From NCBI RefSeq assembly GCF_001194135.2, contig NC_069009.1:1358396-1416985 (forward strand): a stretch of 58,590 nucleotides of DNA. Direction: 5' to 3'. Shown here piece by piece: positions 14,360 to 55,499 of the stretch. Source of the DNA: Octopus bimaculoides (lineage: Eukaryota). Made by a program: the position numbers and the translations under genes. The notes below the pieces were generated by a model that saw only the letters and a list, made by a program, of their open reading frames with translations, did no database searches and was not told where the DNA came from. Each line of letters begins with the position of its first letter. Position 1 is the stretch's first letter.

Positions 14360-15559
14360 ATGCCAAAAGTTAAAGGAAAAACTTCATACCATTGTGGTAT
14401 CTGCAAAAAATCATTTTCTCATAAAGGTAGCTTAACCACACACAAATGTATTCACACAGAAGAGAAGCAATATCACTGCGATTTCTGTGCTCAATCCTTT
14501 TCCAGTAGTAGCACTTTAACTTGTCACAGGCGCACTCATACAGGAGAGAGGCCATATCGTTGTGACATCTGTGGTAAATCATTCTCTCGAAATTATCTTT
14601 TAACTACACACAAACGTATTCATACAGGAGAGAGACCATATCACTGTGATATCTGTGGTAAATCCTTCTCTCAGAATAATCACTTGATTTCGCACAAACG
14701 CAGCCATACTGGAGAGAAACCATTTCACTGTGATATCTGTGATAAATCATTCTCTCGAAATCATCACTTGACTGCACACAAACAGCTTCATACAGGTGAG
14801 AGACCATACCACTGCAATACCTGTGGTAAATCGTTCTCTCGAAGTCACAACCTAACCACACACAAACGCTGTCATACAGGTGAGAAACCATATCATTGTG
14901 ATGTCTGCGGGAAGTCCTTCTCTGAAAGCAGCGTCTTGAATATACACAAACGTATTCATACAAAAGAGAAACCGTATCATTGCGATATCTGTGGTAAATC
15001 ATTCGCTCGACATCATGTCGCAGCCGTACACAAACGTATCCATACAGGCGAGAAACCATATCCATGTAGTATCTGTGGTAAATCCTTTTCGTGTTTGAGC
15101 AGTTTAATCACTCATAAACATATTCACACAGGAGAAAAGCCATATCAGTGTGATATTTGTGGTAAATCGTTCTCTCAGACCTGTTCCTTAACTATCCACA
15201 AACGTATTCACACGGGGGAGAAACCGTATCAGTGTGATATCTGTGGTAAATCATTCTCTTGTGCAGCCACTTTAAATACTCACAAACGCATTCATACAGG
15301 TGAGAAGCCATATCACTGTGATATATGTGGCAAGTCGTTCTCTCACGGAAACAGTTTAACTTATCACAAACATATTCATACTGGAGTGACGCCGTACCTC
15401 TGTAATATCTGTGGAAAATCCTTCTCTAGCACATGCAATTTAAATACTCACAAACGCATTCATACGGGAGAGAAACCATATCAATGTGATATATGTGATA
15501 AATCATTCACTCAAAGTAGTAATTTAATTCAACACAAATGTACTCATACCGAGATATAA
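14360..15559 (+). CDS. ZF3: tandem C2H2 zinc-finger protein, 399 aa, 14 fingers
   Basis: ORF track translation; in-frame TAA at 14333-14335 upstream of the ATG. Confidence 0.92.
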
Positions 15560-16504: not shown

Positions 16505-16871
16505 NNNNNNNNNNNNNNNNNNNNNNNNNNNNNNNNNNNNNNNNNNNNNNNNNNNNNNNNNNNNNNNNNNNNNNNNNNNNNNNNNNNNNNNNNNNNNNNN
16601 NNNNNNNNNNNNNNNNNNNNNNNNNNNNNNNNNNNNNNNNNNNNNNNNNNNNNNNNNNNNNNNNNNNNNNNNNNNNNNNNNNNNNNNNNNNNNNNNNNNN
16701 NNNNNNNNNNNNNNNNNNNNNNNNNNNNNNNNNNNNNNNNNNNNNNNNNNNNNNNNNNNNNNNNNNNNNNNNNNNNNNNNNNNNNNNNNNNNNNNNNNNN
16801 NNNNNNNNNNNNNNNNNNNNNNNNNNNNNNNNNNNNNNNNNNNNNNNNNNNNNNNNNNNNNNNNNNNNNNN
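16505..16871. other. Assembly gap (N run)
   Basis: Direct. Confidence 1.
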
Positions 16872-18514: not shown

Positions 18515-20038
18515 TTATTCTTCTGTATGGATAAACACATGTGTAGCTAATAGTCTTTTCCGAGAAAATGATTTACCACAGATATCGCAGTGATAAGGCT
18601 TTTCACCTGTATGAATACGAACATGTTCAGTTAAATTACCTTTCTGAGTGAATGCCTTTCCACAGATATCACAGTGATGTGGCCTCTCACCTGTATGAAT
18701 ATATTTGTGTTTGGTTAAATGGTAATTGACAGGAAACGATTTGCCACAGACATCACAATGATATGGTTTCTCTTCTCTATGAATGTGTTTGTGTTTTGTC
18801 AAGTTCCGTTTTAGAGAGAATGCCTTACCACAGATATCACAATGGTGTGGCTTCGTTCCTGTGTGAATCTGTTTGTGTTCTGTTAACTTACACTTTTGAG
18901 AGAATGATTTACCACAGATATCACAGTGATACGGTTTCTCACCTGTATGAATGTGTTTATGCTCAGTTAAATTACCTTTCTGAGAGAATGACTTACTACA
19001 GATATCACACTGATACGGTTTCTCTCCAGTGTGGACACGTTTGTGTTCAGTTAAGTTACCTTTTAGAGAGAACGATTTACCACAGATATCACAGTGATAT
19101 GGTTTCTCTCCCGTATGAATGCGTATGTGTTCAGTTAAGTTGCTACTTCCAGAGAATGATTTGCCACAGACATCGCAGGCATACGTTTTATCTCCTGCAT
19201 GAAGGTGTTTATGTTTGGTTAAGGTACTGCTGGTAGAAAACGGCTTACCACAGATATCACAGTGATATGGCTTCTCGCCTGTATGCATGTGCTTGTGTTC
19301 GCTTAAGTGGTGGCTTCGAGAGAAGGATTTTCCACAGATATCACAGTGATATGGCTTCTCTCCAGTATGATTACGTTGATGTACAGTTAAGTCATGCTTT
19401 CGAGCAAAAGATTTACTACAGGTGTCACAGGGATATGGTTTCTCGCTTGTATGAGTGTGTTTGTGTTCAGCCAAGGTACTTTTCACAGAGAATGATTTAC
19501 CACAGATATCACAGACGTATGGCTTCTCTCCCGTGTGAACACGTATGTGAGTTGTTAAGTTTGTACTTCGACAAAATGACTTACCACAGATGTCACAGTG
19601 GTACGGCTTCTCTCCTGTGTGAATACGTTTGTGTTCAGTTACTTGATGGTTTCGAGAGAACGATTTACCACAGATGTCACAGTGATAAGGCTTCTCTCCA
19701 GTATGAACACGTTTGTGCTTAATTAAATGATCATTTAGAGAGAATGTTTTATCACATACATCACACTGATATGGCTTCTCTCCTGTATAAATATCTTTGT
19801 ACTCAGTCACTGCACTTTCTTCAAGGAAGGATTTCTCGGAGATATCACAGTCATACGATATCTCTCCTGTATGAATAAGTTGGTGTGTAGTAAGTTCACA
19901 TTTTTGAGAGAAGGTATTTTTACAGATATCACACTGGTATAATGCTATTTCTGTGTCTTTCGGCATCTCATTAGAAAAATCAATCCATTCGGTTTGTGTC
20001 TCACACTTAACTGTGCTCTCACACAATTCATTTTCCAT
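18515..20038 (-). CDS. ZF4: tandem C2H2 zinc-finger protein, 507 aa, 16 intact fingers plus 1 degenerate
   Basis: ORF track translation; MENELC leader. Confidence 0.94.
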
Positions 20039-21379
20039 AATTTTTCTCCTTTCACCACAATATACAAGTGTTTTCCTTCTAAATAGTTATATATATATAT
20101 ATACACACATATATTTAATATCTAACACATATTTCATCGGTTATCTTTCTATCAACTGTGATGTCAATCAATAACTGTAAATGCTGCAAATTACTTCATG
20201 ATCTGAATTAAATTTCAATCCAAGATCACCTTGTACACATTCCAGTTCAGAAAAAAACCTATCACAGTAATTCTACCACAGATTTGATAAAACTCAGTAG
20301 ACTACGCGTTCTGTATAAAATGTTCCTTTAGCCTTTAAAAGTTAATAAGTATTGGTGATATATCCAAAGTAAAAATCATAATTCTTTAGTGACGATGTCG
20401 TCTGATATTCTGAAATAATAGAAAAATGGTAAATGGTATAGAGGATACTTAAACAATTGAAAATTCAACAACAGAAATTTTATTATATTTCTATATCAAG
20501 TGTAAATATAAGCATTTACATGAACAGTTAAACTTCATAATTTGCTATTATAGTTATATTTTACACACTAATGCAAAGGTCAGGAAACTTTCCCAACCAA
20601 TTACCCCCAAATGTATTTATTTACACCAACGTTATCCCCTTAATTTGAAAGAAAGAAAATCATAGTCTTTGAATTCAAAAGGTTTGTTCCGTGGCGAGTG
20701 TTGTAGACATGTGCTCAACGTGCCAAACTGTGGGACTGAATACAAATACATGTAGTTATAAAGCAATATGTCTGCATAGACGTTATTGCAATATATTTAA
20801 AAAGAGACGTTAAACCACGATCCATTAGAATATAAACATCTTTAGAAATTATGGTTTTAAGCACAGTAGATAATTCCCGACCCAATTACACAGAAAAGGC
20901 GTCAGTGGCTTCATCGTAATAAATACAACCCATGCTAGCATGGAAAGCGGACGTTAAACGTATCAAGCGTCGACAGTGAAGAAATAGCAGTCAAATCTCC
21001 GCGGTCTGTATCAAGAATATCCAAAGCAAATCAAATACTGAAAATACATTCTATGAGAATATAATGAAACACTTGGAAGTGTTTTATTATTCTATTATTA
21101 CACGTTCATTAAAAGAAACGGTAACTTTACATTGGATTTTTAAACAATCAGAGATGATATTTTGAAGATCGATCTAGAATAAACTTGTAAATATGTTGTT
21201 GATTTCTCTGATTACTGTTTAATTGTTGATTTCAAACAACCTGCAGGACAATAGACTATCGATCTCTGCTTAGCAACAAAAATAAACTTTCACCATTGTC
21301 TCTTGTTGATTCTTTTTTTAATTTTAATTACCCAAGTTCACCGAATTTTGCTAAAAATAAAATCTGTATTATATCTTAC

Positions 21380-21520
21380 CTGTTATGATATATAAATCAG
21401 TGTTTAATGTGAAATATGTTTAATTAAGCCATAGAACGATTTCACAGGAAATACAAAAACCTTGAAGAATGAGATTACAAAAATAGACACGGATAAACGA
21501 ACCGCACTGGGTTTCCGAAA
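21380..21520 (-). other. Putative non-coding exon 1 of ZF4
   Basis: Conserved CCGTGTC motif and ATAACAG|GTAAGATATA donor; 5' limit approximate. Confidence 0.55.
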
Positions 21521-22429
21521 GCTATCATCTCGTATACACACACACACACATATAATCGGCCAGTTGTTCATAAGTAATTATGTGTGTGTGTATCTTTCTA
21601 TGTAAAATATATATTTAATTATGTGAATGTGTGTGTGAGTGTATTTATACATATAAAAATGTATATATATATATATAATAAAATTACGGATAAAACCACT
21701 TTAATGATTTTATCAAGTGCCCAGCGTGAAATAAAAACCTTGTAGGTAACATTTTATACTAATTTATAAATTAGTATATGTATACAGACTGTCCTCATTT
21801 AACGACCACTCGGAGTTATGACGAACTTTACGAGCGGTCGTTACATATTTTACAAAATATAAAAACTTAAGAACTTTGACTGTCGTATTGTGTGCTGTAC
21901 GAGAACTGCCGTCGTGACGGCAGCGCACGCAGAGCACCCAGCCTCACCCTCCGACATCGTAAGTTGACAGTATCCATATCTTAACTTTAAGGTTTTCTTT
22001 GTGATAATCTTACTCTTACTTATTCATTTTTCAACAATTTGTGTTAGTGATTCTTGGCCCTGTACTGCATATACTTTATACAGTACGGTATTCTGTTTTT
22101 ATATGTATGTACAGTACACTATACCTATAAAAAAAAAATACGTACCCTATGAAAATTCGTTTTAGCATTGTTGTTCTAGCCTTTTTTAAACAATCACATA
22201 TGGTTTGTCCCAAAGAATCAACCTTTTAAATAAGAGTTTTGCTTCCACTAGCGAAAGCTATACGTATCTTTCAGAAAGCTCCATGCCAATTTGACTTTAT
22301 GTAGCATCTGTTGTTACTTTATGCGCAGGCTATGTGGGAAGATAGAATAAAGGGGCTATTGTTAGCTTATAATGAAATCGATAATCACTTGGTGCACCAA
22401 AACACATTTCCTTTTCCAGATAATACAAG

Positions 22430-23449
22430 CATGCCACCTAAAAAGAGAGCATGCATTGGCAGAAAGTTTTCTGCCGTGGCAAGGCAGCAGTACTGGTAGG
22501 TTAAGGAAACTGAGGACCACAGGTCCTGTAGATCAGGGGTTTTCAAACTTTTTGACTTGCGGACCCCTTTATATTTCAGGCTTTACCTTAGGGACCCCCT
22601 TATAAACGCTTATGAAATTTCTACATAAATATTTGCTTAAAATAACATATATCTTTACATTTATTTATTTAACAGTATTTAACAAATAGGTTTATTGTCA
22701 ATTAAAAGATTTCGATTAAAAAACATATATAAAATCAAATTGCCCATAAAAAGTATTTGCTGTCTTGTCCGCGGACCACAGTTTGAAAACCCCTGCTGTA
22801 GATTGTTGAAAAGAGCTGCTGCTGCATGAAACCTACTGAGTGCTATCCATTGGGCATGCAGTGTTGCATCCACTAAAGAAGCCCCAGAAGAGAGTCCAAT
22901 CAACACTGCATCCGCTTCTGCCTCGAGGTTGGCAGATGATGACAACCATCGTATGATGAGACTTCAATCTAATGTCCACCGGAAGACTCTTGCTGACTAT
23001 TGGAATCCATCGAATAGTCAAGGGGCATTAAAGGAGCGCAACTGTGATCCTGAAGCAATTATTATACCACCCAAGAGATTATGTCTGTAATATGTCCATT
23101 TTGCAAGGCCCTCAAGTGGGTTGGATAATCCAGTGGCCTATGCTGCTCAAATGGAAAGGTTCACTTACCTGACCTGCAAAACATACATCAGCCTTTGCTC
23201 TCTTTAATCCTTGGTCAACACCCTGATTCACTGCAATTTATACAGAAAATTTGTATTTATAACTCTGCCTTCCAGATGACAAGTTTTGGTCACAAACCCA
23301 TTCATGAAGACTCCTGTATGCCAACGTTCAAAATTCAGGACCAAACCTATCATCAGATAGGCTCTATTCTTCCTGTCAAGAAGAATGGAGCCTTCAAATT
23401 TACTTCATGGAAGAAAGCACTGAGCAAACGGTTCCCCGAGCTCAGGTAG
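22430..23449 (+). mobile_element. Degenerate Helitron Rep/helicase N-terminal coding remnant, interrupted by a hAT MITE
   Basis: From 23081: MSVICPFCKALKWVG*SSGLCCSNGKVHLPDL; then YNSAFQMTSFG...PTFKIQDQTYHQIGSILP; both resemble Helitron N-terminal motifs; 5' limit tentative. Confidence 0.7.
22534..22795 (+). mobile_element. hAT MITE, 262 bp
   Basis: Same TIR; TSD CTGTAGAT at 22526-22533 and 22796-22803. Confidence 0.92.
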
Positions 23450-23815
23450 CACCTGGAACAAAGTAAAGAAAGTTTCCATCCACTAAATCCCTTCACAAGA
23501 CTTTGGTCAGTCTGATGCTATAGTAGAAGACACTTGCCCAAGGTACTACACATCAGGATTGAACCTAAAACCATGTGGTTAGGACTGAACCCAGAACCAT
23601 GCCTATGCTTAGATGTTCTACATAAAAAAATCAATGGAGAATAATTAAAGAGTAAAACAACTTTATTCCTCTTTCAAGTTATTAAAAATATTCACAAAAT
23701 GTGATGAGGTCAGAATTCAAAAACCTCAGTCTTGCAGCTGAAATGACTAAAGATTGAAATAATGTTTTTAGACAGACAGGTTTGACTCTCAATACAAGAT
23801 GGAGTTTTCACACAA

Positions 23816-23890
23816 CTAGTGATATTTTACTGTATAGATGCTTATATGCCTTGTTAAGTGATTTCTTTGGGAGAATGATTTACCTCAGAT
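23816..23890 (-). pseudogene. Distal half-finger behind ZF5 (I*GKSFSQRNHLTRHISIYT)
   Basis: Manual translation of the reverse complement. Confidence 0.8.
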
Positions 23891-23902
23891 AGATGAAGTA
23901 TT

Positions 23903-24233
23903 GAAGGCTGATCTCAAAATCCTGATCCTTACAAAGGAGATGACAGACAACTGAGAAATGTGGTGTATTGCTGTACTGAAGACCTGCCTACCACAACAGA
24001 ACTGAGATTCTGAAACCAAGGTGTCATATAAAAAGCACTGGTGATGGGGCCCATTATAAGCACCCACTCCACTCTGTGGGGTAGTGTGGCATTAGGAAAG
24101 ATATCCAATTGTAGAAACCAATCCAAAACAGACTATGGAACTGGGGTGGCCCCTAGCCTTGATAGTTCCTGCGAAGCCATACAACCCATGCCAGCATGGA
24201 AAACGGGCGTTAAATGTTGATGATGAAGATTAC
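23903..24233 (+). mobile_element. Retroelement family C inserted within a finger at the ZF5 3' end
   Basis: Flanked by two halves of one finger. Confidence 0.75.
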
Positions 24234-24237
24234 GATG

Positions 24238-25575
24238 TCACAGTGATGTTTTCTCTCTTGTATGAATGAGCTTGTGTCTAGTGAAAGTACCATTCATAGC
24301 AAATGATTTACCACAGATATCACAGTGATATGGTTTCTCACCCGTATGAATACGTTTGTGAGTAGTTAAGTTACCTTTCTGAGCAAACGACTTACCACAG
24401 ATATCACAGTGAAATGGTCTCTCACCTGTATGAATACGTTTGTGTGCAGTTAAGTAATCTTTTTGAGAGAATGATTTACCACAGATATCACAGTGATATG
24501 GTTCCTCACCTGTATGAATGTATTTGTGCTTAATTAAGTCACTGCTTCCACTGTATGACTTACCACAGATATCACAGTGATATGGCTTCTCTCCTGTGTG
24601 AGTGCGTTTGTGCTGAGTTAAGTTACAACTTATACTGAATGACTTTCCACAGATATCACAGTGATATGGCTTCTCCCCTGTATGAACACGTTTGTGTTTT
24701 GCCAAACAACTTCTTCCAGAGAATGATTTACCACAGATATCACAACGATAGGGTTTCTCTCCTGTATGAGTGTCCCTGTGCTGAATTAAATTACTATTCT
24801 GAGAAAATGATTTACCACAGATATCACACTGATATGGTTTCTCACCTGTATGAATACGTTTGTGAGTAGTTAAGTCACTACTTCCAGAGAATGATTTACC
24901 ACAGATATCACAATGGTATGGCTCCTCTCCTGTATGAAGACGTTTATGATGAACTAAACTATTTGTTTGAGAGAATGTTTTACCACAAATGTTACAGTGA
25001 TACGGTTTTTCTCCTGTATGAATGCGCTTGTGAGTAATCAATGTCCAATTAGCAGTGAACGATTTACCACAGATATCACAGTGATAGGGTTTCTCCCCTG
25101 TATGAATGCGTTTATGGGCAGTTAAGTTGTGACTCTCAGAGAATGATTTACCACAGACAGCACAGTGATATGGTGTTTCTCCTGTGTGAATGCGTCTATG
25201 AGTTTTTAAGGTACTGTTTACTGCAAATGACTTACCACAGATATCACAGTGATATGGTTTCTCACCGGTATGAAAGTATTTATGTTTGTTGAAGTTACCC
25301 TTTGTAGCGAATGACTTATCACATATGTCACAGCAGTATGGTTTCTCTCCTGTATGAATACGTTTGTGTTTAATTAAGAGGTTATTTTGAGAGAATGATT
25401 TACCACAGACATCACAGCGATATGGTTTCTCTCCAGTAGAAATGCATTTATGAGTAGTTAGGTTACAGCCTTGAGAAAAAGTCTTTTTGCAGATATCACA
25501 ACAGTATAATTTCTCTCTTTCTTTCGTTATTTCTTCATGAAATAAGCCATCCTTTACATTTTTCACATAACTCAT
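24238..25575 (-). CDS. ZF5: tandem C2H2 zinc-finger protein, 445 aa, 14 intact fingers plus degenerate first finger, ends TSL*
   Basis: ORF 24238..25602; ATG at 25575 matches the paralog start (MSYV). Confidence 0.93.
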
Positions 25576-25617
25576 TGTTCTATAATGTTCTGATACCACC
25601 ACAACAAATAAATACTT

Positions 25618-25673
<56 letters not shown>

Positions 25674-26404
25674 TATATTTCTAGTGATTTTGTCAGTATC
25701 TGAAGATTACAGATTTCTTTATAAATGTATCCATGTTTAATTAGAATGTGAAATACTCATGTAAATATTCCAGACAGTGAGGAAGAGAAATCTTGTTATT
25801 CATCTTAGTTCAGAACAAAGTATTTCATAGTTATTCATCACAGATATATTATATAAACATGTTTATATCAATTATTTATTACACCTTCCTTTCGTCTTTA
25901 AAAGATTATTAATATTCATGATGTATCTCAAGTAGAAATTCCTTCTTACCACAGACGTCTGATGTTCTGAAATGATATAAAACAGAAAATAGTTAAAAAG
26001 GAGAGATTCAATAATAGAAATGTTATAGTATGTTTTCATAAGGATAAACTGTGGATATAAATTTTTACCTAAAAAGTTACTTCTTATTTTGTCATTAAAA
26101 CTATATTATGCGACTGTGAGTAATGTGGAACTTTCAAATCGTGAATGTTCCGAGACGCCTCACCGGAGCCAAGAAGCAATCTGCAAGCGGAATAACAAAT
26201 ATATACGTCAACAACGACCTCCCATACAAAACGAAAGGAACCAGAGAAGCAACATGCTACATTCACCTTAGTTTACAAAATAATCATCATTTTATGTGAC
26301 TACTATAATTAATTAAACTAAACTAATTACGGTATACTTAATACACGTAAAAAAGCAAGACATCCAGAGACTTCAATTCAACTGAAATATATATCATATC
26401 TTAC

Positions 26405-26550
26405 CTGGTATTTTACATAAATTACGGTGTAATGTAAAATATCTTCAAGTTACATTAAAGTGCGATTTCCCAAAATGAAATGTTAAAACATTAAAAAAAA
26501 ACCGACACGGTAAACAACGAAACGAACTTAGAATCTGGTGGTTGTGTACA
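26405..26550 (-). other. Putative non-coding exon 1 of ZF5
   Basis: TTCGTTTCGTTGTTTACCGTGTCGGTTTT motif and CCAG|GTAAGATA donor. Confidence 0.6.
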
Positions 26551-27216
26551 TCCTATCATCAATCTTTTGTTGTTTACGGATGTAATGTTACCAATTTTTT
26601 TTCCTTTTTAATTTTGAAATATAATACAGATTTTAAAAATCATGCAGTGTGAAGATTATCTAGACGTAATTATATTATACTAATGATGCGAAACCAGAAC
26701 TGGAATGAAGAAAACGAAAGATCGGTATCTGGTTAAAATATAGAAAGAAGATTATTTAGAATAGATTTTAAAAATAATTAAATAGAAATTACGTGAGTTA
26801 AGTTTATCCCAAAATTCTACTAAAACAACTGAGATATTAGATCAGTTGTAATATAATGATTCTCTATGGTGAAATTGAAAATTTCACCATCATCGTGTTT
26901 AATAGTACAGATCAATTTCGTGGGTCTCGAATTTCGCCAGATTATTATTTTTTTAAAAATTGTTGTTTTGAAATGCTGAGGATTATTTTCTAGAAATAGA
27001 TCCCAAAGTCGCAAGCTAAAAGTTGTGATATCAAAGGCTTACATTGGCAGCATATCTCTGGGAGATCAGCACGTACAAGAAACGTTCATGTAGTCTCTGA
27101 GCTATACCGACCATGCAGCAAAAAGAATTTTAAGTTTCGGTGCGGATTATGTACCACCGCTCATTAAACCGGTACAAATAAGTGGTACTTTATTTGAACC
27201 ACCCAGCTTGAAAGAG

Positions 27217-27360
27217 ATACACAACCTCCCGATTCTTAGTTCGTTTCTCTGTTTACCGTGTCCAGTTTTTGAAATGTCTTAAAACTCAATTTTTTGTGGA
27301 ATCACCTTTAATTGTAAATTAAAGACATTTCATATCAAACTCTGATTTTTAACACCAGGT
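27217..27360 (+). other. Orphan paralog of the ZF non-coding first exon with intact donor (CAG|GTAAGAT at 27358/27359)
   Basis: Aligns with the reverse complement of 26405-26550 (ZF5) and 56146-56290 (ZF10); no plus-strand finger ORF follows before ZF8. Confidence 0.75.
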
Positions 27361-27382
27361 AAGATATATATATATATATATA

Positions 27383-28127
27383 NNNNNNNNNNNNNNNNNN
27401 NNNNNNNNNNNNNNNNNNNNNNNNNNNNNNNNNNNNNNNNNNNNNNNNNNNNNNNNNNNNNNNNNNNNNNNNNNNNNNNNNNNNNNNNNNNNNNNNNNNN
27501 NNNNNNNNNNNNNNNNNNNNNNNNNNNNNNNNNNNNNNNNNNNNNNNNNNNNNNNNNNNNNNNNNNNNNNNNNNNNNNNNNNNNNNNNNNNNNNNNNNNN
27601 NNNNNNNNNNNNNNNNNNNNNNNNNNNNNNNNNNNNNNNNNNNNNNNNNNNNNNNNNNNNNNNNNNNNNNNNNNNNNNNNNNNNNNNNNNNNNNNNNNNN
27701 NNNNNNNNNNNNNNNNNNNNNNNNNNNNNNNNNNNNNNNNNNNNNNNNNNNNNNNNNNNNNNNNNNNNNNNNNNNNNNNNNNNNNNNNNNNNNNNNNNNN
27801 NNNNNNNNNNNNNNNNNNNNNNNNNNNNNNNNNNNNNNNNNNNNNNNNNNNNNNNNNNNNNNNNNNNNNNNNNNNNNNNNNNNNNNNNNNNNNNNNNNNN
27901 NNNNNNNNNNNNNNNNNNNNNNNNNNNNNNNNNNNNNNNNNNNNNNNNNNNNNNNNNNNNNNNNNNNNNNNNNNNNNNNNNNNNNNNNNNNNNNNNNNNN
28001 NNNNNNNNNNNNNNNNNNNNNNNNNNNNNNNNNNNNNNNNNNNNNNNNNNNNNNNNNNNNNNNNNNNNNNNNNNNNNNNNNNNNNNNNNNNNNNNNNNNN
28101 NNNNNNNNNNNNNNNNNNNNNNNNNNN
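27383..28127. other. Assembly gap (N run) next to (TA)n
   Basis: Direct. Confidence 1.
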
Positions 28128-29629
28128 ATATACCATAATTCAGTTTAATTGATTATAGAGGTCACATAAAATGATGATTAATTTGTAAACTATGGTGAAT
28201 GTAGTATGTTATATCTCTAAGGTCCCTTTCGTTTTGTATAGGAAGTCGTTGTGTACGCACATATTTGTTATTCCACTTGCAGATTGTGTCTGTTAAAAGT
28301 TGTGTATCGTTTTATCATAGCGATTATTACTAACCATATGTTTGTCGGCTATTTGTGTTGCAAAAGAGTATTACAGTCGTAGATATGTTCCATTTTTAGC
28401 ACCTGGATCTGGTCACCTTAAAGGGATCTATATGAATGAAGCAATCCAGGTACTTATTTTTAAACCAGGTGTTGCTTGTTTGAACGAAACCTACAAGCCA
28501 ATAGTTCAGCATTGGCAAAGTTTTATTACAGAATTAAGTAATACATACATACATATCTCAGATCTAGTATATTTCAGTCACAAACTCTGCAATTTTTAAA
28601 AGGAAGTAAAAAAAATCTGAAAATTGGTTATCTTGATGTAGTTTTCCACGTTTATTTCTGTGAAACCATGAACTTGTGGAGAAAAAAATTTGGCATAAAA
28701 GTTATAGACGTTTAAAAGTTGTAAAAACTGTATTTTTAGGCAATAACAAAACAAATTTTCTGCTTTATAGCAGTGTTAACTTTAAGGTTATACCCTGTGA
28801 AATTTATTGTTTAGCGTCTGAGGATTCTAAATAAAGTCAACATGTATCATCTTACCATTTCTTTCGTCTTTTCATTGATTTCTATAGTGTTTTGTATATT
28901 TTTATTATTATTTTTAAATTTGTTATATTAATATATTTGTCTTTATGTGTTTGTTCCACATTGGTTTTTAAAGCTGAACTTTATGAAGCCATTGATCTGT
29001 TCCCCAGCAGTTCAAAGATGCATCTATAATGCACTTGTACAAAAACAAAGGGAAAAAGAGTGTACGTGATAATCCCCTTTTCCAATAGAAGAATAAGGAT
29101 AATCAAAAAGAATGGAGAAATGTGTTGATATTGGCAAGCTATTCTAGTGTAATTGTAAGCCACAGACACATTAATAACGGTTTCCATAGTAATAATCAGA
29201 CATGAAAACTCTGTGAGAACCACATGTTGACAAATACGTTGAAACCAATTTCAAGGATAGATTGGTGCTAATTTACTTCTTGTCCTTTTGAAATTTCAAA
29301 TTCAAAATCAAATAACACTTAATTAGCCAAAATGAATTGAATGACCCAACCACCTCTCACTCTGAGTTTAGAACATAGAATTTAGCTTTTTGCCACTTTG
29401 ACATTTATCTATCAACTTTCTAGTGAATTTTGGTTTGTAGTTTTCATATTTTGAAATATAATCTTACTTTTCCAAGGTGCACCTAATTACATCATAATTA
29501 GTGAGGTGATACAAATGAGAAAAATGTAAAAATTTAATTTATTTAATAAAAAAAGATACAATTGCTGTACTTTATTCACCAGGACATCTATTTTATCACT
29601 GATGTTGTTATTGATCAATATCAATGAAT

Positions 29630-29765
29630 ATATGTTTAGTTAAGGAACATTATTGAGACAATGATTTAGCACAGATAACAGTCATATAAATCTTAACCTT
29701 TATGAATATGATGTGGTTCAGTTAAGTGATTTCTACAAGAAAATGGTTTATCAAATGTCACGGTT
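29630..29765 (-). pseudogene. Two eroded fingers downstream of the ZF6 stop
   Basis: KPFSCRNHLTEPHHIH (end of ORF 29693..29896) and an ICAKSLSQ-like remnant. Confidence 0.7.
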
Positions 29766-31484
29766 TTATGGTCTTTCTTCTGTATGAGTCTGTTTGTGTT
29801 TGGCCAAATAACTTCTTGCAGAGAATGATTTACAACATATATCACACGGAAATGGTTTCTCTCTTGTATGAGTGCGTTTATGCACAGCAAAGTCACGTTT
29901 TACAGAGAATTGTTTACCACAGATATTACAGTGATATGGTTTCTCCCCTGTATGAATGTATTTGTGTCTAGTTAAGTTATCTGCACGAGAAAATGATTTA
30001 CCACAGATATCACACTGACATGAATTCTCTCCAGTGTGAATGTTTTTATGAGAAGTAAGGCGACAGTTTTGTGAGAACGATTTACCACATATATCACAGC
30101 AATATGGTTTCTCACATGTGTGAACATATTTGTGAGAGGTTAAATTACTTTTAGTCATGAATGATTTACCACAAACATCACAAGTATATGCTTTCTCTCC
30201 TGTGTGAATGTGTTGGTGAGAGATAAGCCTGGTCTTCTGAGAGAAGGTTTTTCCACAGACATCACAGTGATATGGTTTCCCTCCTGTGTGAATGTATTTA
30301 TGAGAGATTAAAGTGCCTCTATGAGAGAACGATTTACCACAGATATCACAGTGATATGGTTTCTCACCTGTATGAATGTATTTGTGAGAAGTGAGAATAC
30401 TTTTTCGTGAGAATGATGTACCACAGATATCACAGAAATATGGCCTCTCATGAGAAAGTTTGTGAGTAGTTAAATGACTTCCTAATGAAAATGATTTACC
30501 ACAAATATCACAAGGATATGGTTTCTCTCCTGTATGAGTGGACTTGTGAGAAGTAAGGCTATTCTTCTGACAGAATGATTTTCCACAAACATCACAGTGA
30601 TATGGTTTATCTTCTGTGTGAATATATTTATGATAGGTCAAAGTGCCTGTGGAAGAAAATGATTTACCACAGATATCACAGTGATATGGTTTCTCTCCTG
30701 TATGAATGTATTTGTGTCTTGTTAATGTTTCCTTTATAGCAAATGATTTACCACATATGTCACAGGGATATGGTTTCTCCCCTGTATGAATGTATTTATG
30801 TCGAGTTAAGGTATGTAATTTAGAGAATGATTTACCACAAATATCACAGCGATGTGGTTTCTCTCCTGTATGAACGAATTTGTGAGAAGTAAGGCCAGTC
30901 TTCTGACAGAAGGACTTGCCACAAATATCACAGTGATATGGTTTTTCTGCTGTGTGAATGTATTGGTGTGAAGTAAGGTTAATCTTCTGAGAGAATGACT
31001 TACCACAGATATCACAGTGATATGGTTTCTCTCCTGTGTGGATGTATTTGTGCGAAGTAAGGTTAGTCTTCTGAGAGAATAACTTTCCACATATGTCACA
31101 GTGATAAGGTTTATTTCCTGTATGAATGTATTTGTGATAAGTAAGGCTACATTTCTGAGAGAATGATTTATCACAGATATCACAGTGATACGGTTTCTCT
31201 TCTGTGTGAATGTATTTATGAGAGGTTAAAGTGCCTCGAGAAGAAAATGATTTACCACAGGTATCACAAGAATATGGTTTCTCTCCAGTATGAATGTATT
31301 TGTGAGAAGTAAGTCTTTGTTTTTGAGAGAACGATTTACCACAGATATCACAATGATATTGCTTCTCACCTGAAGGAATACATTCGCGAACAGTGAGATT
31401 TCCCTCATTAGAGAAAGACTTTTCACAGACATCACATTGGTATGATAGTTTTTCTCTTTCTTTTGTCATCTCCTGAGGATTCAT
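29766..31484 (-). CDS. ZF6: tandem C2H2 zinc-finger protein, 572 aa, 19 intact fingers plus degenerate first finger
   Basis: ORF 29766..31508; first ATG at 31484. Confidence 0.93.
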
Positions 31485-33123
31485 TGTTGTTCTATAGTAT
31501 ACAAGCACAAAATATATTTTTGCTCCCTTTTCTAGATATTTCTTTGTTGATTCAAATACTTCTATTGCTATATTTCAGGCAGTTCTGAAAAACGATACAA
31601 ATACCTTCATAGATATTTTCCAAGTTCAAAGAGAATGTGAAATACTAATGCTGCTAGTAATTCAGAAGAAATATTTCAGTTATTCACCATAGATAAATTA
31701 TATGAATATGGTTATATCTATTAGTTTAAAACATCTTCCATTAGTCTTCAGTATCTGATGTAAAACCTCTTTTATGCTACAGATGTCTGATATTCTGAAA
31801 TGATAAAGAAACAGCGTAAGATATAGGAAATACTTAAAAAAAGCAGAGATTCAACAATAAAAACATTACTAATTTCTCATGACAAAGAGTTGATATCAAC
31901 TTTTATCTGAATAAATTGGCTGTTTCTTTAGTAAATTTTGATATTCTCACCCACACGATTTTCACTAAGAAAAAAGAAAACCTGACGTCCTAATATGCTG
32001 CAAACCCCTTATTTTTGTTTGGAAAAAAAAGTGGGAGTGGGAAAACCGAACCCCACCCCTATTCTGGAATAATTGGAAAATTTTTTTTCTTTTTTTTGAA
32101 TGAATTACAGTGACCTCCTAATATACCACAAAACCCTTTTTGGGTCTGAAAAAAGGGGTGGGGTGGGGTGGAATGGAACCCTCGGAAATCCCCACCACCA
32201 GTACTACATTTTCTAGTGTGTGAATTACATGGTTCGTTATTAAATATATAGAGAATGTAGATTAATATGCGTAAAATACACAGTATAAATACTGTGTATT
32301 TTAAGCTGAAAATAATTTTTTCTTAAGTCGTAGTGTATGCAGATATATATATATATATATATATCTTCCTGGGGCTATAAACAACAGTAGCACCGTCCTG
32401 TAGAGGATGCCATATTTAGTTGCCAAATATACTTTACGATTCCGTACTGCTACTGTTTATATCTTGCTCAGAGATTTAATATAACATATCTCTCTTTTAT
32501 ATATAATAGCGTGTATGTATATGTAGACATACACTGACAAAGTACTACTTACCTCCTTGCTGTCACATACAATTGGATTAATCTCAAAAAATACATTTTT
32601 TTCTCTCCACTAAATATTTTCAGCTTTATACCAGTGTTTTAGGAAAGAAAAAATCTTTCGCATCCAAACTCACTTGCTCGTCTGTGATGGATATTAATTC
32701 TATTCATCAATTATGCTAAAAAAAAAAACCCTCTTCATTTCACTTGGCATGGCTAATGAAAAAGCACCTTAATTTTTAATTTCTTTAATTACAGTAGCTA
32801 TTCTATTTGCTGATTGTGTCCATTCAAGGCTGTCTATTGCTTTATAACAAGGGTATCATTTGCTGCATATCTCTATTTGTTGTTTATTCTGTCAAACTGA
32901 TCCACGTTTATAGTTATGCCAACTGTTAACTCCTAAGAATTCTCTGCCAATATCTTAAAACACAAATATCCGACTGCAACATCGAGCCAGCGATACGGAC
33001 ATGACAAAACGAAATACAGCTTTTAGTAGACACAAATGGTAAAAACTTTCACTTTTGTCAGGAGTTTTTAATTAGCCAGATTCATCGGCTTTTACTAAAA
33101 ATAAAATATACATTATATCTTAC

Positions 33124-33250
33124 TTGTTATGATATAAAATCAGTGTCTTCTATTACTCGAACGAGCAATCTAAAGAGGAAATTAATTTGAAGACACTTCA
33201 AAAAACCGACACGGAACGTCAGCGAAACGAACAAACAATCCGTATGTTGT
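33124..33250 (-). other. Putative non-coding exon 1 of ZF6
   Basis: Same conserved motif and AA|GTAAGATA donor. Confidence 0.55.
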
Positions 33251-33467
33251 GTACCTCGTATAACTACACTTTTGTCGAATGCTAAAACTAAGGTGGCCTA
33301 TTTGCAATTTTTGTATTACTGTAATTGATTTTTGAAAAATGTGAATTGTAATTAAAACAAAAAATCCGTATGATGACAAAAAATACAAAACTAGAACCGG
33401 ACTGTTTCTTTTCAAGTTTATTGGTACTTTTACGCTATCCTGTTACCGATCATCTATGTTACAGGGC

Positions 33468-33843
33468 GGAGGCGCAATGGCCCAGTGGTTAGGGGAGCGG
33501 ACTCGCGGTCATAGGATCGCGGTTTCGATACCCAGATCGGGCGTTGTGAGTGTTTATTTAGCGAAAATACCTAAAGCTCCACGAGGCTCCGGCAGGGGAT
33601 GGTGGCGAACCCTGCTGTACTCTTCCACCACAACTTTCTCTCACTCTTACTTCCTATTTCTGTTGTGCCTGTAATTCAAAGGGCCAGCCTTGTCACACTC
33701 TGTGTCACGCTGAATATCCCCGTCTACACGTGTCTGTGGAGTGCTCAGCCACTTGCACGTTAATTTCACGAGCAGGCTGTTCCATTAATCAAGTGGAGCC
33801 CTCGACGTCGCAAGCGACGGAGTGCCAACAACAACAACAACAA
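33468..33843 (+). mobile_element. SINE family A
   Basis: Shared head and body, (CAA)n tail. Confidence 0.88.
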
Positions 33844-33989
33844 TTCGTCTTTCTTGACCTCTCTCTGTAAAGGGCTCTTCCTCTGTCTTAACCTCTTCTC
33901 GCCAATATTGTTCACAATTGAATTTAAGTTTTGATAGTAGTGTGTCGCGCAAATTTTTCGAAGCCCATGTTCCCAAAATGTCTTCACGT

Positions 33990-34241
33990 CGTGTTGAATT
34001 ATGGAAAAGGTTACAGAATGTTACTTTTCTGGATTTTTTGAAAGAAAACAAGTTAATTGCACAAAAAAAAAAAAAATGTACTTGTCGTCGTCAAATGGAA
34101 ATTGAATCTTTCCAACGTGCTATTGACTATGTTATTTGCAGTAAAACGATCTCTATAAGGAAACATACTTTTTTAGAGACATGCCACTGGGAGGACTTTC
34201 AGACATTTTTCAAGCACATAGCCGAAATATATCCACAGTGA
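33990..34241 (+). mobile_element. Possible Merlin/ISXO2-type transposase N-terminal zinc-ribbon remnant
   Basis: FLKENKLIAQKKKKCTCRRQMEIE...AIDYVICSKTISIRKHTFLE resembles the GLL..C..C..M..DG..C..SIRxxTFF pattern. Confidence 0.4.
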
Positions 34242-38388: not shown

Positions 38389-39101
38389 TAGCTTCAAAAT
38401 GAAGTTTTATTGTAGATCAGTTTGGGAAAATGTATCACTTTTATCATATATTGATCAAGTGTGTGAATTCTATAGTTTATGGTAGTGTCACCAGCACAAG
38501 ATTTGGTTGGATACCTGCATATAAAATGATAGAAGAATAATCAAAGGTTAAAACAACTTTATTTCTCTTTTAATTTATTAAATTTATTCATGAAATTTGA
38601 TGAGATCCAATTTCAGGAATTTAGAGAAATGTAAGGATGCTATATCATCCATTGCATGGGTTACACAAGATACATATTTGGACCATAGGTAGTGGGGGGG
38701 CATTTGGCTTTTGTCATCACTTCCAGAATTAAGCTGGAGGCTTATTCCTGGAGGTGTGGGGCAGTAGCATGAAGGCTGCAGCTGCTGGGATTCCTAGGCT
38801 TGTCCATCCAGCAGAAAACTGACCAGGAATGGAAACTGGGAAGTCATAATGACATATCCACAAGAAAACAAAACAAATTAAGTTCATCAAAACTATTTGA
38901 ATGAAAAACACACATAATTATTGAGTAGGGCAAATGAGAAACGTGGTAAATATTTCATTTGTTCAATACAATGTAATACAGTTGCTGTACTTTATACAGC
39001 AGGACACTTATGTTATCAAATAATATTATCAATCAATATGAATAAATATATGTTCAGTTACGGTACATTATTGAGAGAATGATTTTGCACATATATGAAA
39101 C

Positions 39102-40007
39102 TTATTCTGTATGATTATATCTGTGTTTGATTAAGTATTCTCTCCGAGCGAATGCTTTACCACAGATATCACAGGGATATGGCTTCTCTCCTGTATGAAC
39201 GGACTTGTGTGTAGTTAGGTTACATGACTGAGAGAATGACATACCACAAACATCACAGTGATAAGGTTTCTCTCCTGTGTGAACGCGTCTGTGAAGAAAT
39301 AAGTTAGTTTTCTGCGAGAATGATTTACCACAGATATCACAACAATATGGCTTCTCTTGTGTATGAATACGTTTGTGATTAGTTAAACTACTTCCTACAG
39401 AGAAAGATTTTCCACAGATTTCACAGTAATATGGCTTCTCACCTGTATGAATACGTTTGTGAGTAATCATGACAGCTTTCTGAGTGAATGATTTACCACA
39501 GATATCACAGCAATGTGGCTTCTCTCCTGTATGAATACGTTTGTGAGTATTCATGGCTCCTTGCTGAGAGAATGCCTGACCACAGATATCACAATGATAT
39601 GGTTTCTCTCCTGTATGAATATAGTTGTGAGTTGTTAGGTTACGTACGCTAGAGAATGATTTGCTACAGATATTACAGGGATAGGGTTTTTCTGCCTTGT
39701 GAATACGCTTGTGAACAAGTAAGTTATTTTTCTGAGAGAATGATTTACCACAGATATCACAGCGATATGGTTTTTCCCCTGTATGAGTACGTATGTGAAT
39801 AGTTAAGGCATTTTGTTGATGAAATGATTTACCACAGAAGCAACAGTGATATGGCTTTTCACTTGTTTGAATATGTTTGTGAACATTGAGATTTGCCCGA
39901 TTATGGTATGATGTTTTACAGATATTACAAGGGTATGACAGTTTTTTTCTTTCTTTTTTCTTCTCTTCAGGACATAAGCCATCCTTTACATTTCTCACAC
40001 AAGTCAT
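39102..40007 (-). CDS. ZF7: tandem C2H2 zinc-finger protein, 301 aa, 9 intact fingers plus degenerate first finger
   Basis: ORF 39102..40127; ATG at 40007 ([11 protein letters not shown]) matches the paralog start. Confidence 0.92.
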   Translation of the reverse strand: MTCVRNVKDGLCPEEKKKERKKLSYPCNICKTSYHNRANLNVHKHIQTSEKPYHCCFCGKSFHQQNALTIHIRTHTGEKPYRCDICGKSFSQKNNLLVHKRIHKAEKPYPCNICSKSFSSVRNLTTHNYIHTGEKPYHCDICGQAFSQQGAMNTHKRIHTGEKPHCCDICGKSFTQKAVMITHKRIHTGEKPYYCEICGKSFSVGSSLTNHKRIHTQEKPYCCDICGKSFSQKTNLFLHRRVHTGEKPYHCDVCGMSFSQSCNLTTHKSVHTGEKPYPCDICGKAFARREYLIKHRYNHTE

Positions 40008-41594
40008 TGTTCTATATTTCTTATACAACCACAAATTATATGATATGTAAACAAACCTAAGTTTATTTTTGAAGCACTGAAATGTATTGTAGTGCAAGTA
40101 GAAAAGTTTTTTTTTTTTTTTTTTCAATGCATAAGCACTGATAAAATCCTACAGGGCAGAAAAATCTATCAGCAACCAGCCATGAGATTTTATCCTATAT
40201 ATGCTGTTCTATACCTACAAACGTGTTGAAAAAATATATCTTTCTACTTATACTACAAATTATGTATTTCTTGTTTTCTCTTTTTACATATTTCTACATT
40301 TTTTTCAAATACTTCTGCAAGTCCGATATTCGTCAATATTTGAAGATGATTACAAACACCATTGCAGATTTTTTCCAAGTCCAAACAGGAGCTTTTGCAA
40401 ATACTCAAAGTAATGAGGAAAACAAATGTTGCTATTAATTCAGAAGAAGTATTTCAGCTATTCACCAAAAATATATTATATAAACAGAGTTATATTTATC
40501 ATTTATAACATCTTCCTCTTGTGTTCAAAAGATGATCAATATTCATAATGTATCTGGAGTAAAAACATTTTTATACCATTGACATCTGATATTCTGAAAT
40601 GATACAGAAACATTAGAAGATATAGGGAATACGTTAAAAGCGGAGATTCAACAATAAAGGTATTACATTTTTATGATGATAAACTATGGATACAAACTTT
40701 TATATTATACAACCTTGTGTAAGGTCTACATATACAAGACTTCGACTCATCTGCTTTCAGATATTAGGAAAATATTAAACAACAAAATATTGGACCATAA
40801 CGTTGTACTTGTGGGAGAAGTCGTTGTTTAGTCCAAGGTCATACCGGAGTGAGCAGACCTATTAATGAAATTAGGTTGTGTTCACGACTGTTACGACATG
40901 CATAACAGGTCAAACATAAACATAACTATACTTCGGTCACCAATCCAATACACTTTTCCTCTTGTAACTTTCGTAATAATACATATATATCTTTTAAAGA
41001 AATATTGCAGCCACACGTTCACAAATACGTTTTTAAATTTTATTTTTTTCCCCAGTTCTTTTGCAATTTGCTGAGTCTGTGTAGTCAAATCTATCTTGTA
41101 TAATAGCGGTGTCATGAGTCACCTGTCTTAGTCGGATATTTGTGTTTCATGATGTTGTAGATAACTATTTATTCTCAGGAGCTTAAAGTGTACATAACTA
41201 TTAAGGTGAATCCTTTTGACAAAATAAACAGCAAATAAAGATATGTAGCAGATGATAAAACAATAGACGGCTTTGAGTGGACACAATCAACAAATAGATT
41301 ATCTACTGTAATAAAAGAATAGGAGGTAAAGAATACGTACACCACCCATTAAAACGTAACAAAAATGCTAACCCTAATCCTATCCCTAACTTTAAACACC
41401 CAGTACACGTATTTTTTACTTTCGTCATAGGAGAAATTTAAAATTCAGTGCTTTTTCATGGTCATGCCAAATCAAATCCAGATCTTGGCATAAGTTACGA
41501 AGTTTATATGAGAATAGAACATCGATCTCAGACTAGCAGCAGTTGGCCTGGTTCTTCAGCTTTTATTAAAAATAAAATATGTGTTATATCTTAC

Positions 41595-41730
41595 CTGTTA
41601 TGATAAATAAATCAGTGTTTGATGTGAAATATCTTTAATTACGCAAAGCGAGAAATATAATTTCAAGACACTTCAAAAAACCGACACGGAAAGTCAACGA
41701 AAGGAACTTATCATCCGCATGTTGTGTATC
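41595..41730 (-). other. Putative non-coding exon 1 of ZF7
   Basis: Same motif and ACAG|GTAAGATA donor. Confidence 0.6.
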
Positions 41731-41944
41731 TCGCATTTTTTAGTCATACGTCGGATACTAAAATTAAGGCGGCCAATTTTTAATTTTTTTTCTTTTACTG
41801 AAATTATGTTTTGAAAATATGAATTTTAAGGAAAAGATCCGAATGATAACAAAAGAAACAAAACTAAAACCTCATTGCTTATTTTCATGTCTACTTCGAA
41901 TTTTACGGTAGAATGTTATAGGAACGCAAAGAAAACAACACAGC

Positions 41945-43295: not shown

Positions 43296-43384
43296 AATTA
43301 TTATCTTTGTTGGTAATATAAAAAAATTATCGTTTAGAAAAAAAAAGATTAGTATTCGCCAAATGTGTAATGACGTAAGATACA

Positions 43385-55449: not shown

Positions 55450-55499
55450 TGTTCTGTAATGTTTCTGATACTACCACAATAAATATATTTTTTTCTTGT

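What the first reader, a model, noticed from the sequence alone, without database searches (positions are those of the whole stretch)
27217..28330. Orphan divergent first exon and intron start with no gene body
A plus-strand copy of the ZF first exon with intact CAG|GTAAGAT donor lies about 670 bp head-to-head from ZF5 exon 1. Intron-1 homology continues after the gap (28130-28290 mirrors 26180-26335), then stops; no acceptor motif or finger ORF follows. It points into the 3' end of ZF6. Options: relic of a deleted 11th gene; promoter of an antisense RNA over ZF6/ZF7 (which could pair with many paralogs); or a distal alternative first exon splicing 17 kb to the ZF8 acceptor at 44300.
Basis: partly seen in the sequence, partly recalled or inferred. 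Interest (0 to 1): 0.7.

Follow-up and report, generated by a model that had tools for sequence, protein, structure and literature searches.

The report
Bodiless zinc-finger gene first-exon relic
This is a real leftover piece of a duplicated zinc-finger gene (its non-coding first exon plus the start of its first intron), cut off at both ends and lying backwards next to a working paralog; it is most likely an inert by-product of gene-cluster turnover.

Summary
Window 27218-27358(+) is a copy of the cluster's leader exon with an intact CAG|GTAAGAT donor at 27359, head-to-head with ZF5 exon 1 about 640-670 bp away. 28128-28290 continues as intron 1.

The gap is not a misjoin and hides no gene. 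An unplaced 363-bp contig (C97214) extends the right flank 76 bp into the gap. The joined sequence is collinear with four paralogs. The gap falls where every paralog has a short (TA)n tract just after the donor.

New findings:
- Intron-like homology runs on to about 28405 when compared with another paralog.
- The 5' edge abuts the terminal ~125 nt of a ~340-nt interspersed repeat. The first ~30 nt of the conserved block and all subfamily upstream sequence are missing.
- Downstream there are three repeat insertions, then ZF6's 3' flank.
- No acceptor, ATG block or finger relic lies on the plus strand before ZF8, 17.3 kb away.

The eight other exon-1 copies in the 78.6 kb I held each have a finger ORF 0.64-1.84 kb past the donor. 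The fragment is old (sister to ZF5, branch ~0.11) and its exon is not measurably decayed, so sequence alone cannot exclude transcription.

Best reading: a doubly truncated gene relic. Ordinary; low interest.

The parts
27096..27220 (.). Terminal ~125 nt of a ~340-nt interspersed repeat. The other ~215 nt of the element are absent. It forms the 5' boundary of the orphan.
   Evidence: About 20 genomic copies at 83-93% identity. Full copies are ~340 nt, and the window copy matches only their right-hand end. The element's natural right terminus GCTTGAAAGAGTTAA merges with exon-1 homology at about 27216-27222.
27218..27358 (+). Orphan copy of the cluster's non-coding leader exon (exon 1), lacking the first ~24-30 nt of the conserved block.
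   Evidence: BLAST to seven paralogs. nhmmer score 108.7 bits, E=1.1e-32, covering model positions 25-191 only. Identity to ZF5/9/10/11 is 73-81%.
27359..27382 (+). Intact 5' splice-site consensus GTAAGAT, running into a (TA)n microsatellite at the gap edge.
   Evidence: Sequence. AG|GTAAG is kept in all 14 exon-1 copies examined.
27383..28127 (.). Assembly gap. It lies at the position of the (TA)n tract that follows the donor in every paralog, and is partly closed from the right by unplaced contig C97214.
28128..28405 (+). Intron-1-like sequence. 28129-28286 is 84.6% identical to ZF5 intron 1. 28161-28405 aligns to intron 1 of a plus-strand paralog at C29:1.480 Mb.
   Evidence: for ZF5. for the other paralog (local score 117, against 58 +/- 8 for shuffles).
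28406..28543 (.). Unassigned single-copy sequence between the last detectable intron homology and the first repeat.
   Evidence: Only a self-hit in the genome.
28544..29493 (.). Block of interspersed-repeat insertions (28544-28996, 28994-29154, 29246-29493), where a gene body would be expected.
   Evidence: Many dispersed genomic copies. The first repeat begins at its own terminus, so it is an insertion and not a deletion edge.
29490..29768 (-). ZF6 3' flank with degenerate finger remnants beyond the ZF6 stop. The orphan points into this.
   Evidence: Homologous to the 3' flanks of ZF7 (38913-39198) and ZF8 (46067-45846). Minus-strand finger-like tblastn hits at 29599-29798.
26177..26577 (-). 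ZF5 exon 1 (about 26404-26577) and the start of its intron 1. This is the other arm of the inverted repeat.
26556..27097 (-). ZF5's own upstream region, forming the spacer between the arms. Homologous to ZF10's upstream, and ending exactly where the truncated repeat begins.
   Evidence: 72% identity over 605 nt to 56297-56885.

Best explanation
The feature is a doubly truncated relic of a paralog in a tandem C2H2 zinc-finger gene cluster. What survives is the non-coding leader exon (minus its first ~30 nt), its 5' splice site, and roughly the first 400 nt of intron 1. It lies in inverted orientation about 640-670 bp upstream of its sister gene ZF5.

Inferred history. An inverted duplicate of a ZF5-like unit arose, either as a whole gene head-to-head with ZF5 (as ZF7 and ZF8 are today) or as a partial copy. 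Later its promoter side was replaced by a truncated mobile-element fragment. Its distal intron, acceptor, finger exon and 3' flank are absent, and repeat insertions now separate the stump from ZF6's 3' flank.

It most likely does nothing. It lacks the family's upstream region and has no acceptor or coding body to splice to. The intact donor and well-kept exon core are what neutral drift would leave at this age.

Shown: the homology, both truncations, the absence of a gene body, continuity across the gap, and the phylogenetic placement. Inferred: the order of events and the lack of transcription.
For: - Homology and anatomy.
- Gap continuity.
- Pairing of exon-1 copies with gene bodies: the eight other exon-1 copies in the 78.6 kb I held each have a finger ORF 0.64-1.84 kb past the donor. 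The orphan is the lowest-scoring copy and lacks model positions 1-24.
- Missing upstream: ZF5/9/10/11 are 68-80% identical to each other over ~235 upstream columns. The orphan is 37-41% identical there, which is background.
- 5' edge: a truncated ~340-nt repeat whose left boundary coincides with the end of the ZF5/ZF10 upstream homology.
- 3' side: no plus-strand finger relic, acceptor or ATG block. Repeats and ZF6's 3' flank follow.
- Placement: inside the ZF5/9/10/11 clade (100/100), sister to ZF5 (90/89), branch 0.11.
- Whole units do invert in this cluster: ZF7(-)/ZF8(+) form a complete head-to-head pair.
- The motif is cluster-specific: 9 genome hits, all on C29:1.385-1.470 Mb, none in the control.
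Against: - The exon core is not degenerate. It mismatches 4-5 of 41-50 strictly conserved columns, against 1-10 for intact genes.
- A relative-rate test shows no acceleration: 14 orphan-specific versus 17 ZF5-specific exon changes.
- The donor is perfect.
- Across subfamilies only the exon-1 block is conserved (73-83%, against 41-55% in the flanks). The core promoter could therefore lie partly inside the retained block.
- No expression data of any kind could be reached.
- I could not decide between 'whole gene later deleted' and 'partial copy from the start'.
Confidence: 0.75

Rival explanations
1. Transcribed stump. Divergent (upstream-antisense) transcription from the ZF5 promoter region, or residual promoter activity in the retained block, starts a plus-strand non-coding RNA. 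The intact 5' splice site helps it elongate. The RNA ends or is spliced within the repeats, or runs antisense into ZF6, with little or no regulatory consequence.
For: The geometry is head-to-head, 635-670 bp from ZF5 exon 1. The donor is intact and the exon core conserved. Only three AATAAA/ATTAAA hexamers lie on the plus strand between 28128 and 31600. The exon-1 block is the only part conserved across subfamilies, so it may carry promoter elements.
Against: The first ~30 nt of the conserved block and the whole subfamily upstream region are missing, replaced by a repeat fragment. No family-type acceptor lies on the plus strand for 17.3 kb. There are no transcript data.
Confidence: 0.15
2. Functional regulator. 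Either an antisense RNA over ZF6/ZF7 that pairs with many paralogs, or an inverted-repeat hairpin with ZF5's 5' end in minus-strand read-through transcripts that feeds RNA editing or small-RNA pathways.
For: If co-transcribed, the two arms would form about 330 intermolecular base pairs (dG -416 kcal/mol, against -170 +/- 5 for shuffles; longest perfect helix 32 bp). The orphan points into ZF6.
Against: This is purely structural. Any inverted duplicate gives such a duplex. There is no evidence of read-through or plus-strand transcription, and no selective signature distinguishes the orphan from neutral drift. The exon-1 block has no conserved RNA structure and no Rfam match.
Confidence: 0.04
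3. Distal alternative first exon of ZF8, splicing from 27359 across ZF6 and ZF7 to the ZF8 acceptor.
For: The only plus-strand family-type acceptor downstream is ZF8's, at 44675-44690. The donor is intact.
Against: The intron would be 17.3 kb. The eight exon-1 copies paired in my sequence have their finger ORF 0.64-1.84 kb past the donor. ZF8 has its own exon 1 at 43352-43528. Two opposite-strand genes lie in between. The orphan belongs to the ZF5/9/10/11 clade and not to ZF8's clade.
Confidence: 0.02
4. Assembly artefact: a false inverted duplication, or a scaffolding misjoin at the gap.
For: The feature straddles an N-gap and is an inverted copy of adjacent sequence, a pattern that assembly errors can produce.
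Against: The arms are only 74-85% identical to ZF5, so they are not collapsed or haplotypic copies. Both gap flanks carry orphan-specific sequence in the same order and orientation as in four paralogs. An independent contig bridges 76 nt into the gap. There is no discontinuity of paralog similarity at the gap. No other unpaired exon-1 or intron-1 start exists in the genome.
Confidence: 0.04

Closest known systems
Truncated duplicate gene fragments (unprocessed pseudogene relics) in tandem gene clusters evolving by birth-and-death, as described for vertebrate KRAB zinc-finger clusters. From general knowledge, not tested here.
   Same: It is a partial, inverted paralogous copy next to intact family members. 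It lacks a coding body and is flanked by mobile-element insertions. Its age is comparable to the divergence of its subfamily.
   Different: What survives here is only the non-coding leader exon plus the intron start, with a perfect splice donor. The finger array, usually the most recognisable part of such relics, is completely gone.
Head-to-head (divergent) gene pairs sharing an intergenic promoter region, such as ZF7(-)/ZF8(+) in this same window.
   Same: Two family first exons face away from each other across a short spacer: 635-670 bp here, and about 1.6 kb for ZF7/ZF8.
   Different: Only one partner (ZF5) has a gene body and the subfamily upstream region. The other has neither.
Lineage-specific C2H2 zinc-finger expansions reported in coleoid cephalopods (PMC9068888, PMC12513265).
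   Same: A dense array of multi-finger C2H2 genes in a large, AT-rich, repeat-rich genome. The genome size (2.34 Gb in 145,327 contigs) suggests such an organism to me from memory.
   Different: The organism was not verified with any tool. A term search of PMC12513265 found no mention of exons, UTRs, promoters or pseudogenes, so it gives no direct comparison for leader exons or gene fragments.

Membership tests
Truncated gene relic (unprocessed pseudogene fragment) | Significant homology to part of a parent or paralogous gene | tested here: met
   Exon 1: E about 1e-23 to 1e-32. Intron 1: E=2.9e-46.
Truncated gene relic (unprocessed pseudogene fragment) | Absence of the remainder of the gene (acceptor, start codon, coding exon) | tested here: met
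   No plus-strand finger relic, acceptor or ATG block in 28128-29800. The next plus-strand family acceptor is at 44675. The gap cannot hold a body.
Truncated gene relic (unprocessed pseudogene fragment) | Loss of the parental promoter or upstream region | tested here: met
   Upstream identity is 37-41% (background), against 68-80% among ZF5/9/10/11. The region is replaced by a truncated repeat. Caveat: the position of the TSS and core promoter in this family is unknown.
Truncated gene relic (unprocessed pseudogene fragment) | Relaxed constraint (accelerated decay) relative to functional copies | tested here: inconclusive
   No acceleration: 14 versus 17 exon changes, and 3 versus 7 at strongly conserved sites. 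Power is low, since ZF5's own exon changes as fast.
Truncated gene relic (unprocessed pseudogene fragment) | Not transcribed or not spliced | not testable with these tools
   No RNA data. Exact-protein look-ups of the neighbouring genes returned nothing, and records of this genome are withheld.
Bidirectional promoter / divergent gene pair | Two first exons on opposite strands within about 1 kb | tested here: met
   669 nt between the exon arms.
Bidirectional promoter / divergent gene pair | A functional gene on each side | tested here: not met
   No gene body on the plus-strand side.
Alternative first exon of a downstream gene (ZF8) | Same-strand acceptor at a distance typical of the family, and no intervening genes | tested here: not met
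   17.3 kb, against 0.64-1.84 kb donor-to-ORF in the eight paired copies. ZF6 and ZF7 intervene, and ZF8 has its own exon 1.
Alternative first exon of a downstream gene (ZF8) | Splice junction observed in transcripts | not testable with these tools
   No RNA data available.
Assembly false duplication / misjoin | Near-identical copies flanking a gap, or flanks that do not fit together | tested here: not met
   74-85% identity to the nearest paralog. The flanks are collinear with the paralogs and bridged in part by C97214.
Known structured or non-coding RNA family | Match to an Rfam model, or a conserved secondary structure | tested here: not met
   No Rfam match at E<=0.1 in 20000-34000. RNAalifold predicts no pairs for the exon-1 alignment.

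The most novel reading that the evidence does not exclude
The bodiless leader exon is kept because it is used. It would act as the start of a spliced or elongating plus-strand RNA driven divergently from the ZF5 promoter region and running antisense into ZF6. Alternatively, it would be one arm of a ~330-bp imperfect hairpin with ZF5's 5' end in read-through transcripts. Either way it would couple the expression of neighbouring zinc-finger genes through antisense, editing or small-RNA pathways.
Probability: 0.05. Interest if true: 0.5.

Novelty: new member of a known kind. Interest (0 to 1): 0.13.

Why it matters
Mostly for annotation and assembly hygiene. The analysis shows that the gap is a (TA)n microsatellite and not a misjoin or a hidden gene. 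It also shows that an unplaced contig belongs in that gap, and that gene predictors should not build an 11th gene or a long chimeric transcript from this donor.

It is also a small, datable snapshot of how a tandem zinc-finger cluster sheds genes, through inversion, mobile-element insertion and truncation.

Only if RNA data showed use of the donor would it become a candidate cis-regulatory RNA within a rapidly evolving transcription-factor cluster.

Tried and rejected
- **Transcript or annotation evidence.** Exact-protein look-ups for ZF5, ZF10 and ZF7 returned nothing, because records of this genome are withheld.
- **Organism identification.** The full-length ZF10 search returned only generic poly-finger hits, mostly vertebrate. 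The N-terminal leader alone found no homologue. The organism therefore remains unverified; a cephalopod is my guess from the genome statistics.
- **More cluster sequence.** I used a degenerate pattern and BLAST queries instead.
- **Other bodiless copies.** Loci of +/-1.5 kb were too short to decide whether the exon-1 copies at C29:1459140 and C29:1469991 have gene bodies.
- **Mosaic across the gap.** I considered a mosaic pattern (exon nearest ZF11, intron nearest ZF5) as a sign of misjoin. I rejected it because sliding windows place the ZF5-specific similarity only in the distal intron, not at the gap.
- **Deletion edge at 28544.** Rejected, because the repeat starts at its own terminus there.
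- **Structured RNA.** Rejected.
- **Decay of the orphan exon.** Not seen.

Full report
**Setting.** The window is G000:C29:1358396-1416985 of a 2.34-Gb genome in 145,327 contigs. It is AT-rich and carries ten long C2H2 zinc-finger ORFs with 9-21 fingers each. ZF1-3 and ZF8 are on the plus strand. ZF4-7, ZF9 and ZF10 are on the minus strand. There are five N-gaps. BLAST with the (TA)n at this gap's left edge found (TA)n runs directly at the edges of four of them (8077, 27382, 42378, 47234) and about 120-130 nt from the other two edges it detected. I could not verify the organism. The genome statistics and the finger expansion remind me of a coleoid cephalopod (context: PMC9068888, PMC12513265), but that is memory and not a test.

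- 27215-27375(+) matches ZF5 exon 1 at 26548-26387(-), at 76% identity and E=1.6e-23. It also matches the corresponding block of ZF9, ZF10, ZF7, ZF6, ZF8 and ZF4.
- The donor CAG|GTAAGAT is intact, with the G of GT at 27359.
- After the gap, 28129-28286(+) matches ZF5 intron 1 at 26336-26177(-), at 84.6% identity and E=2.9e-46.
- The repeat finder returns the same three inverted arms, with 669 nt between the exon arms and no further palindromic sequence in the spacer.

**The gap was tested first, as asked.** A whole-genome search with the right flank found an unplaced 363-bp contig, C97214. Its reverse complement is 100% identical to 28128-28414 and adds 76 nt to the left: CTGACTTA(TA)9TTTCGGTTACGTTAAACTCTCTGAATCTCTTGCTTTTTTGTGTGTATTAA. 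The left flank ends in ...CACCAG|GTAAGA(TA)11.

Joined, the two flanks align collinearly with exon 1 and intron 1 of ZF5, ZF9, ZF10 and a further paralog just outside the window (ZF11, C29:1431159-1431319). In those genes only about 17-19 TA-rich nucleotides lie between the donor and TTTC[AG]G. The gap is therefore an expanded (TA)n microsatellite, with at least one interruption, in a non-coding position. Reading frame is irrelevant and there is no room for a gene body.

A possible warning sign was that the exon is nearest to ZF11 (80%) while the intron is nearest to ZF5 (85%). This does not map to the gap. In 40-column windows the orphan is about equally similar to all four paralogs on both sides of the gap. 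The extra similarity to ZF5 is confined to the distal ~110 nt. No other unpaired exon-1 or intron-1 start exists in the assembly.

**Is 'exon 1' an exon?** No transcripts were reachable, so this rests on sequence.
- A profile built from the gene-linked copies finds nine copies in the 78.6 kb I hold. Eight of them have a finger ORF starting 0.64-1.84 kb past the donor.
- Five more copies lie further along C29, and all keep AG|GTAAG.
- Across subfamilies (for example ZF7 against ZF5 or ZF11) the block is 73-83% identical, while the intron (41-55%) and upstream region (~45%) are at background. The block itself is therefore constrained.
- A conserved acceptor, TTTGTAWC.TTCAG|A, lies ~100 nt before the family start codon.
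- The core motif TTCGTTTCNYTG-N4-5-CCGTGTC occurs nine times in the genome, all within C29:1.385-1.470 Mb. The reversed-pattern control gives none. The orphan is the only plus-strand hit.
- The block has no Rfam match and no consensus RNA structure.

**What lies 3' of the stump.**
- Relative to ZF5 the homology stops at 28290. A plus-strand paralog at C29:1.480 Mb has, ~260 nt past its donor, a segment aligning to 28161-28405 (score 117, against 58 +/- 8 for shuffles). The 'stop' is therefore partly a ZF5-side change, and the orphan keeps roughly 400 nt of intron 1.
- 28406-28543 is single-copy.
- Three interspersed repeats follow, at 28544-28996, 28994-29154 and 29246-29493. The first begins at its own terminus, so it is an insertion and not a deletion edge.
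- From 29490 the sequence is ZF6's 3' flank. It is homologous to the 3' flanks of ZF7 and ZF8, and carries degenerate minus-strand finger remnants beyond the ZF6 stop.
- There is no plus-strand finger relic, acceptor or ATG block anywhere in 28128-29800. On the plus strand the family acceptor motif occurs only at 44675 (ZF8), which is 17.3 kb away.

**What lies 5' of the stump.**
- ZF5's own upstream region (26556-27097) is 72% identical to ZF10's upstream and ends at 27097.
- Exactly there begins the terminal ~125 nt of a ~340-nt interspersed repeat, with about 20 scored copies at 83-93% identity. Its other ~215 nt are absent.
- The repeat's natural right end (GCTTGAAAGAGTTAA) merges with the exon-1 homology (TACACAAC...) at 27216-27222.
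- As a result the first ~24-30 nt of the family-wide conserved block are missing (nhmmer aligns model positions 25-191 only). The ~235 upstream columns that ZF5/9/10/11 share at 68-80% identity are also missing; the orphan is at 37-41% there, which is background.

**Age and constraint.**
- An ML tree of exon 1 plus the alignable intron places the orphan inside the ZF5/9/10/11 clade (100/100). It is sister to ZF5 (90/89), with a terminal branch of 0.11 against 0.12 for ZF5.
- The fragment is therefore old.
- Its exon core is not degenerate. It mismatches 4-5 of 41-50 strictly conserved columns, against 1-10 for intact genes.
- A relative-rate test shows no acceleration: 14 versus 17 changes in the exon and 14 versus 13 in the intron.
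- With about 0.11 changes per site, survival of a 9-nt donor by chance is unremarkable. This is my inference, and these data neither prove nor exclude selection.

**Interpretation.** The simplest account is a gene relic truncated on both sides. An inverted ZF5-like unit arose next to ZF5. This was either a whole gene head-to-head with ZF5, as ZF7 and ZF8 still are, or a partial copy. It now retains only the leader exon and the proximal intron. Its promoter side is occupied by a truncated mobile element joined to ZF5's upstream region. Its distal side is occupied by repeats and the neighbouring gene's 3' flank. I put this at 0.75.

**Rivals.**
- Incidental transcription of the stump, as divergent transcription from ZF5's promoter region helped by the intact 5' splice site: 0.15. 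It is compatible with the geometry and with only three poly(A) hexamers on the plus strand up to 31600.
- A regulatory antisense or hairpin role: 0.04. The only support is that the arms could pair (330 bp, dG -416 against -170 kcal/mol for shuffles), which any inverted duplicate would do.
- Splicing to ZF8: 0.02.
- An assembly artefact: 0.04.

**Verdict.** The more exotic options are unsupported but need RNA data to be excluded. This is an ordinary product of cluster turnover, and interest is low.

Noticed in passing
window 8078-8469, 16505-16871, 27383-28127, 41995-42377, 46961-47233: (TA)n runs lie at the edges of four of the five assembly gaps (8077, 27382, 42378, 47234) and about 120-130 nt from the 16505 and 46961 edges. 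The gaps therefore look like microsatellite dropouts rather than structural uncertainty. Small unplaced contigs (C97214 here; C127295 and C7980 carry ZF start-codon blocks) may close some cluster gaps.
   Followed up: partly
window exon-1 copies: 21361-21536(-), 26386-26577(-), 33105-33282(-), 41575-41758(-), 43352-43528(+), 52461-52654(-), 56132-56318(-); also C29:1431159-1470014: A ~190-nt non-coding leader block with an AG|GTAAG donor is conserved at 73-83% across subfamilies, while its flanks are at background. Its core motif is confined to about 90 kb of one chromosome (9 genome hits). Why a 5' leader is held this tightly is unexplained; it may carry a core promoter or translational control.
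   Followed up: partly
window 29599-29768 (-): Finger-like coding remnants continue in frame-shifted or degenerate form just past the ZF6 stop codon. This suggests that ZF6's array was shortened by a premature stop.
   Followed up: no
window 41575-41758(-) and 43352-43528(+): ZF7 and ZF8 form a complete head-to-head pair, with their first exons ~1.6 kb apart and a gap (41995-42377) in the shared intergenic region. This is the intact counterpart of the ZF5/orphan arrangement.
   Followed up: partly
window 55509 and 55641 (-): ZF10 carries two copies of the intron-1 acceptor block (TTGTAACCTTCAGA) 132 nt apart. This is a small tandem duplication that could offer alternative acceptors.
   Followed up: no
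window 25620-25683: A (TA)n microsatellite sits inside ZF5's exon 2 leader, between the acceptor and the start codon.
   Followed up: no
L016 (C29:~1478764-1481823), positions 1700-2040: Intron 1 of the plus-strand paralog at C29:1.481 Mb holds about three tandem ~60-nt units (GTGAAATTAACGTGCAAGTGGCTGAGCACTCCACAGACACGTGTAC...), followed by (TA)n. Part of its exon 1 appears to lie in a 785-N gap.
   Followed up: no
C29:1459140(-) and C29:1469991(-) (L035, L037): Two further exon-1 copies for which no start-codon block was found within reach. They could be additional bodiless leader exons, or simply have longer introns or gaps (L037 contains 940 N).
   Followed up: partly
window 1776-2360(-), 14607-15107(-), 18730-19719(+), 55338-55793(+): ORFs of 150-195 aa lie on the strand opposite the finger arrays. 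They are probably a by-product of the repetitive codon structure and not genes.
   Followed up: no
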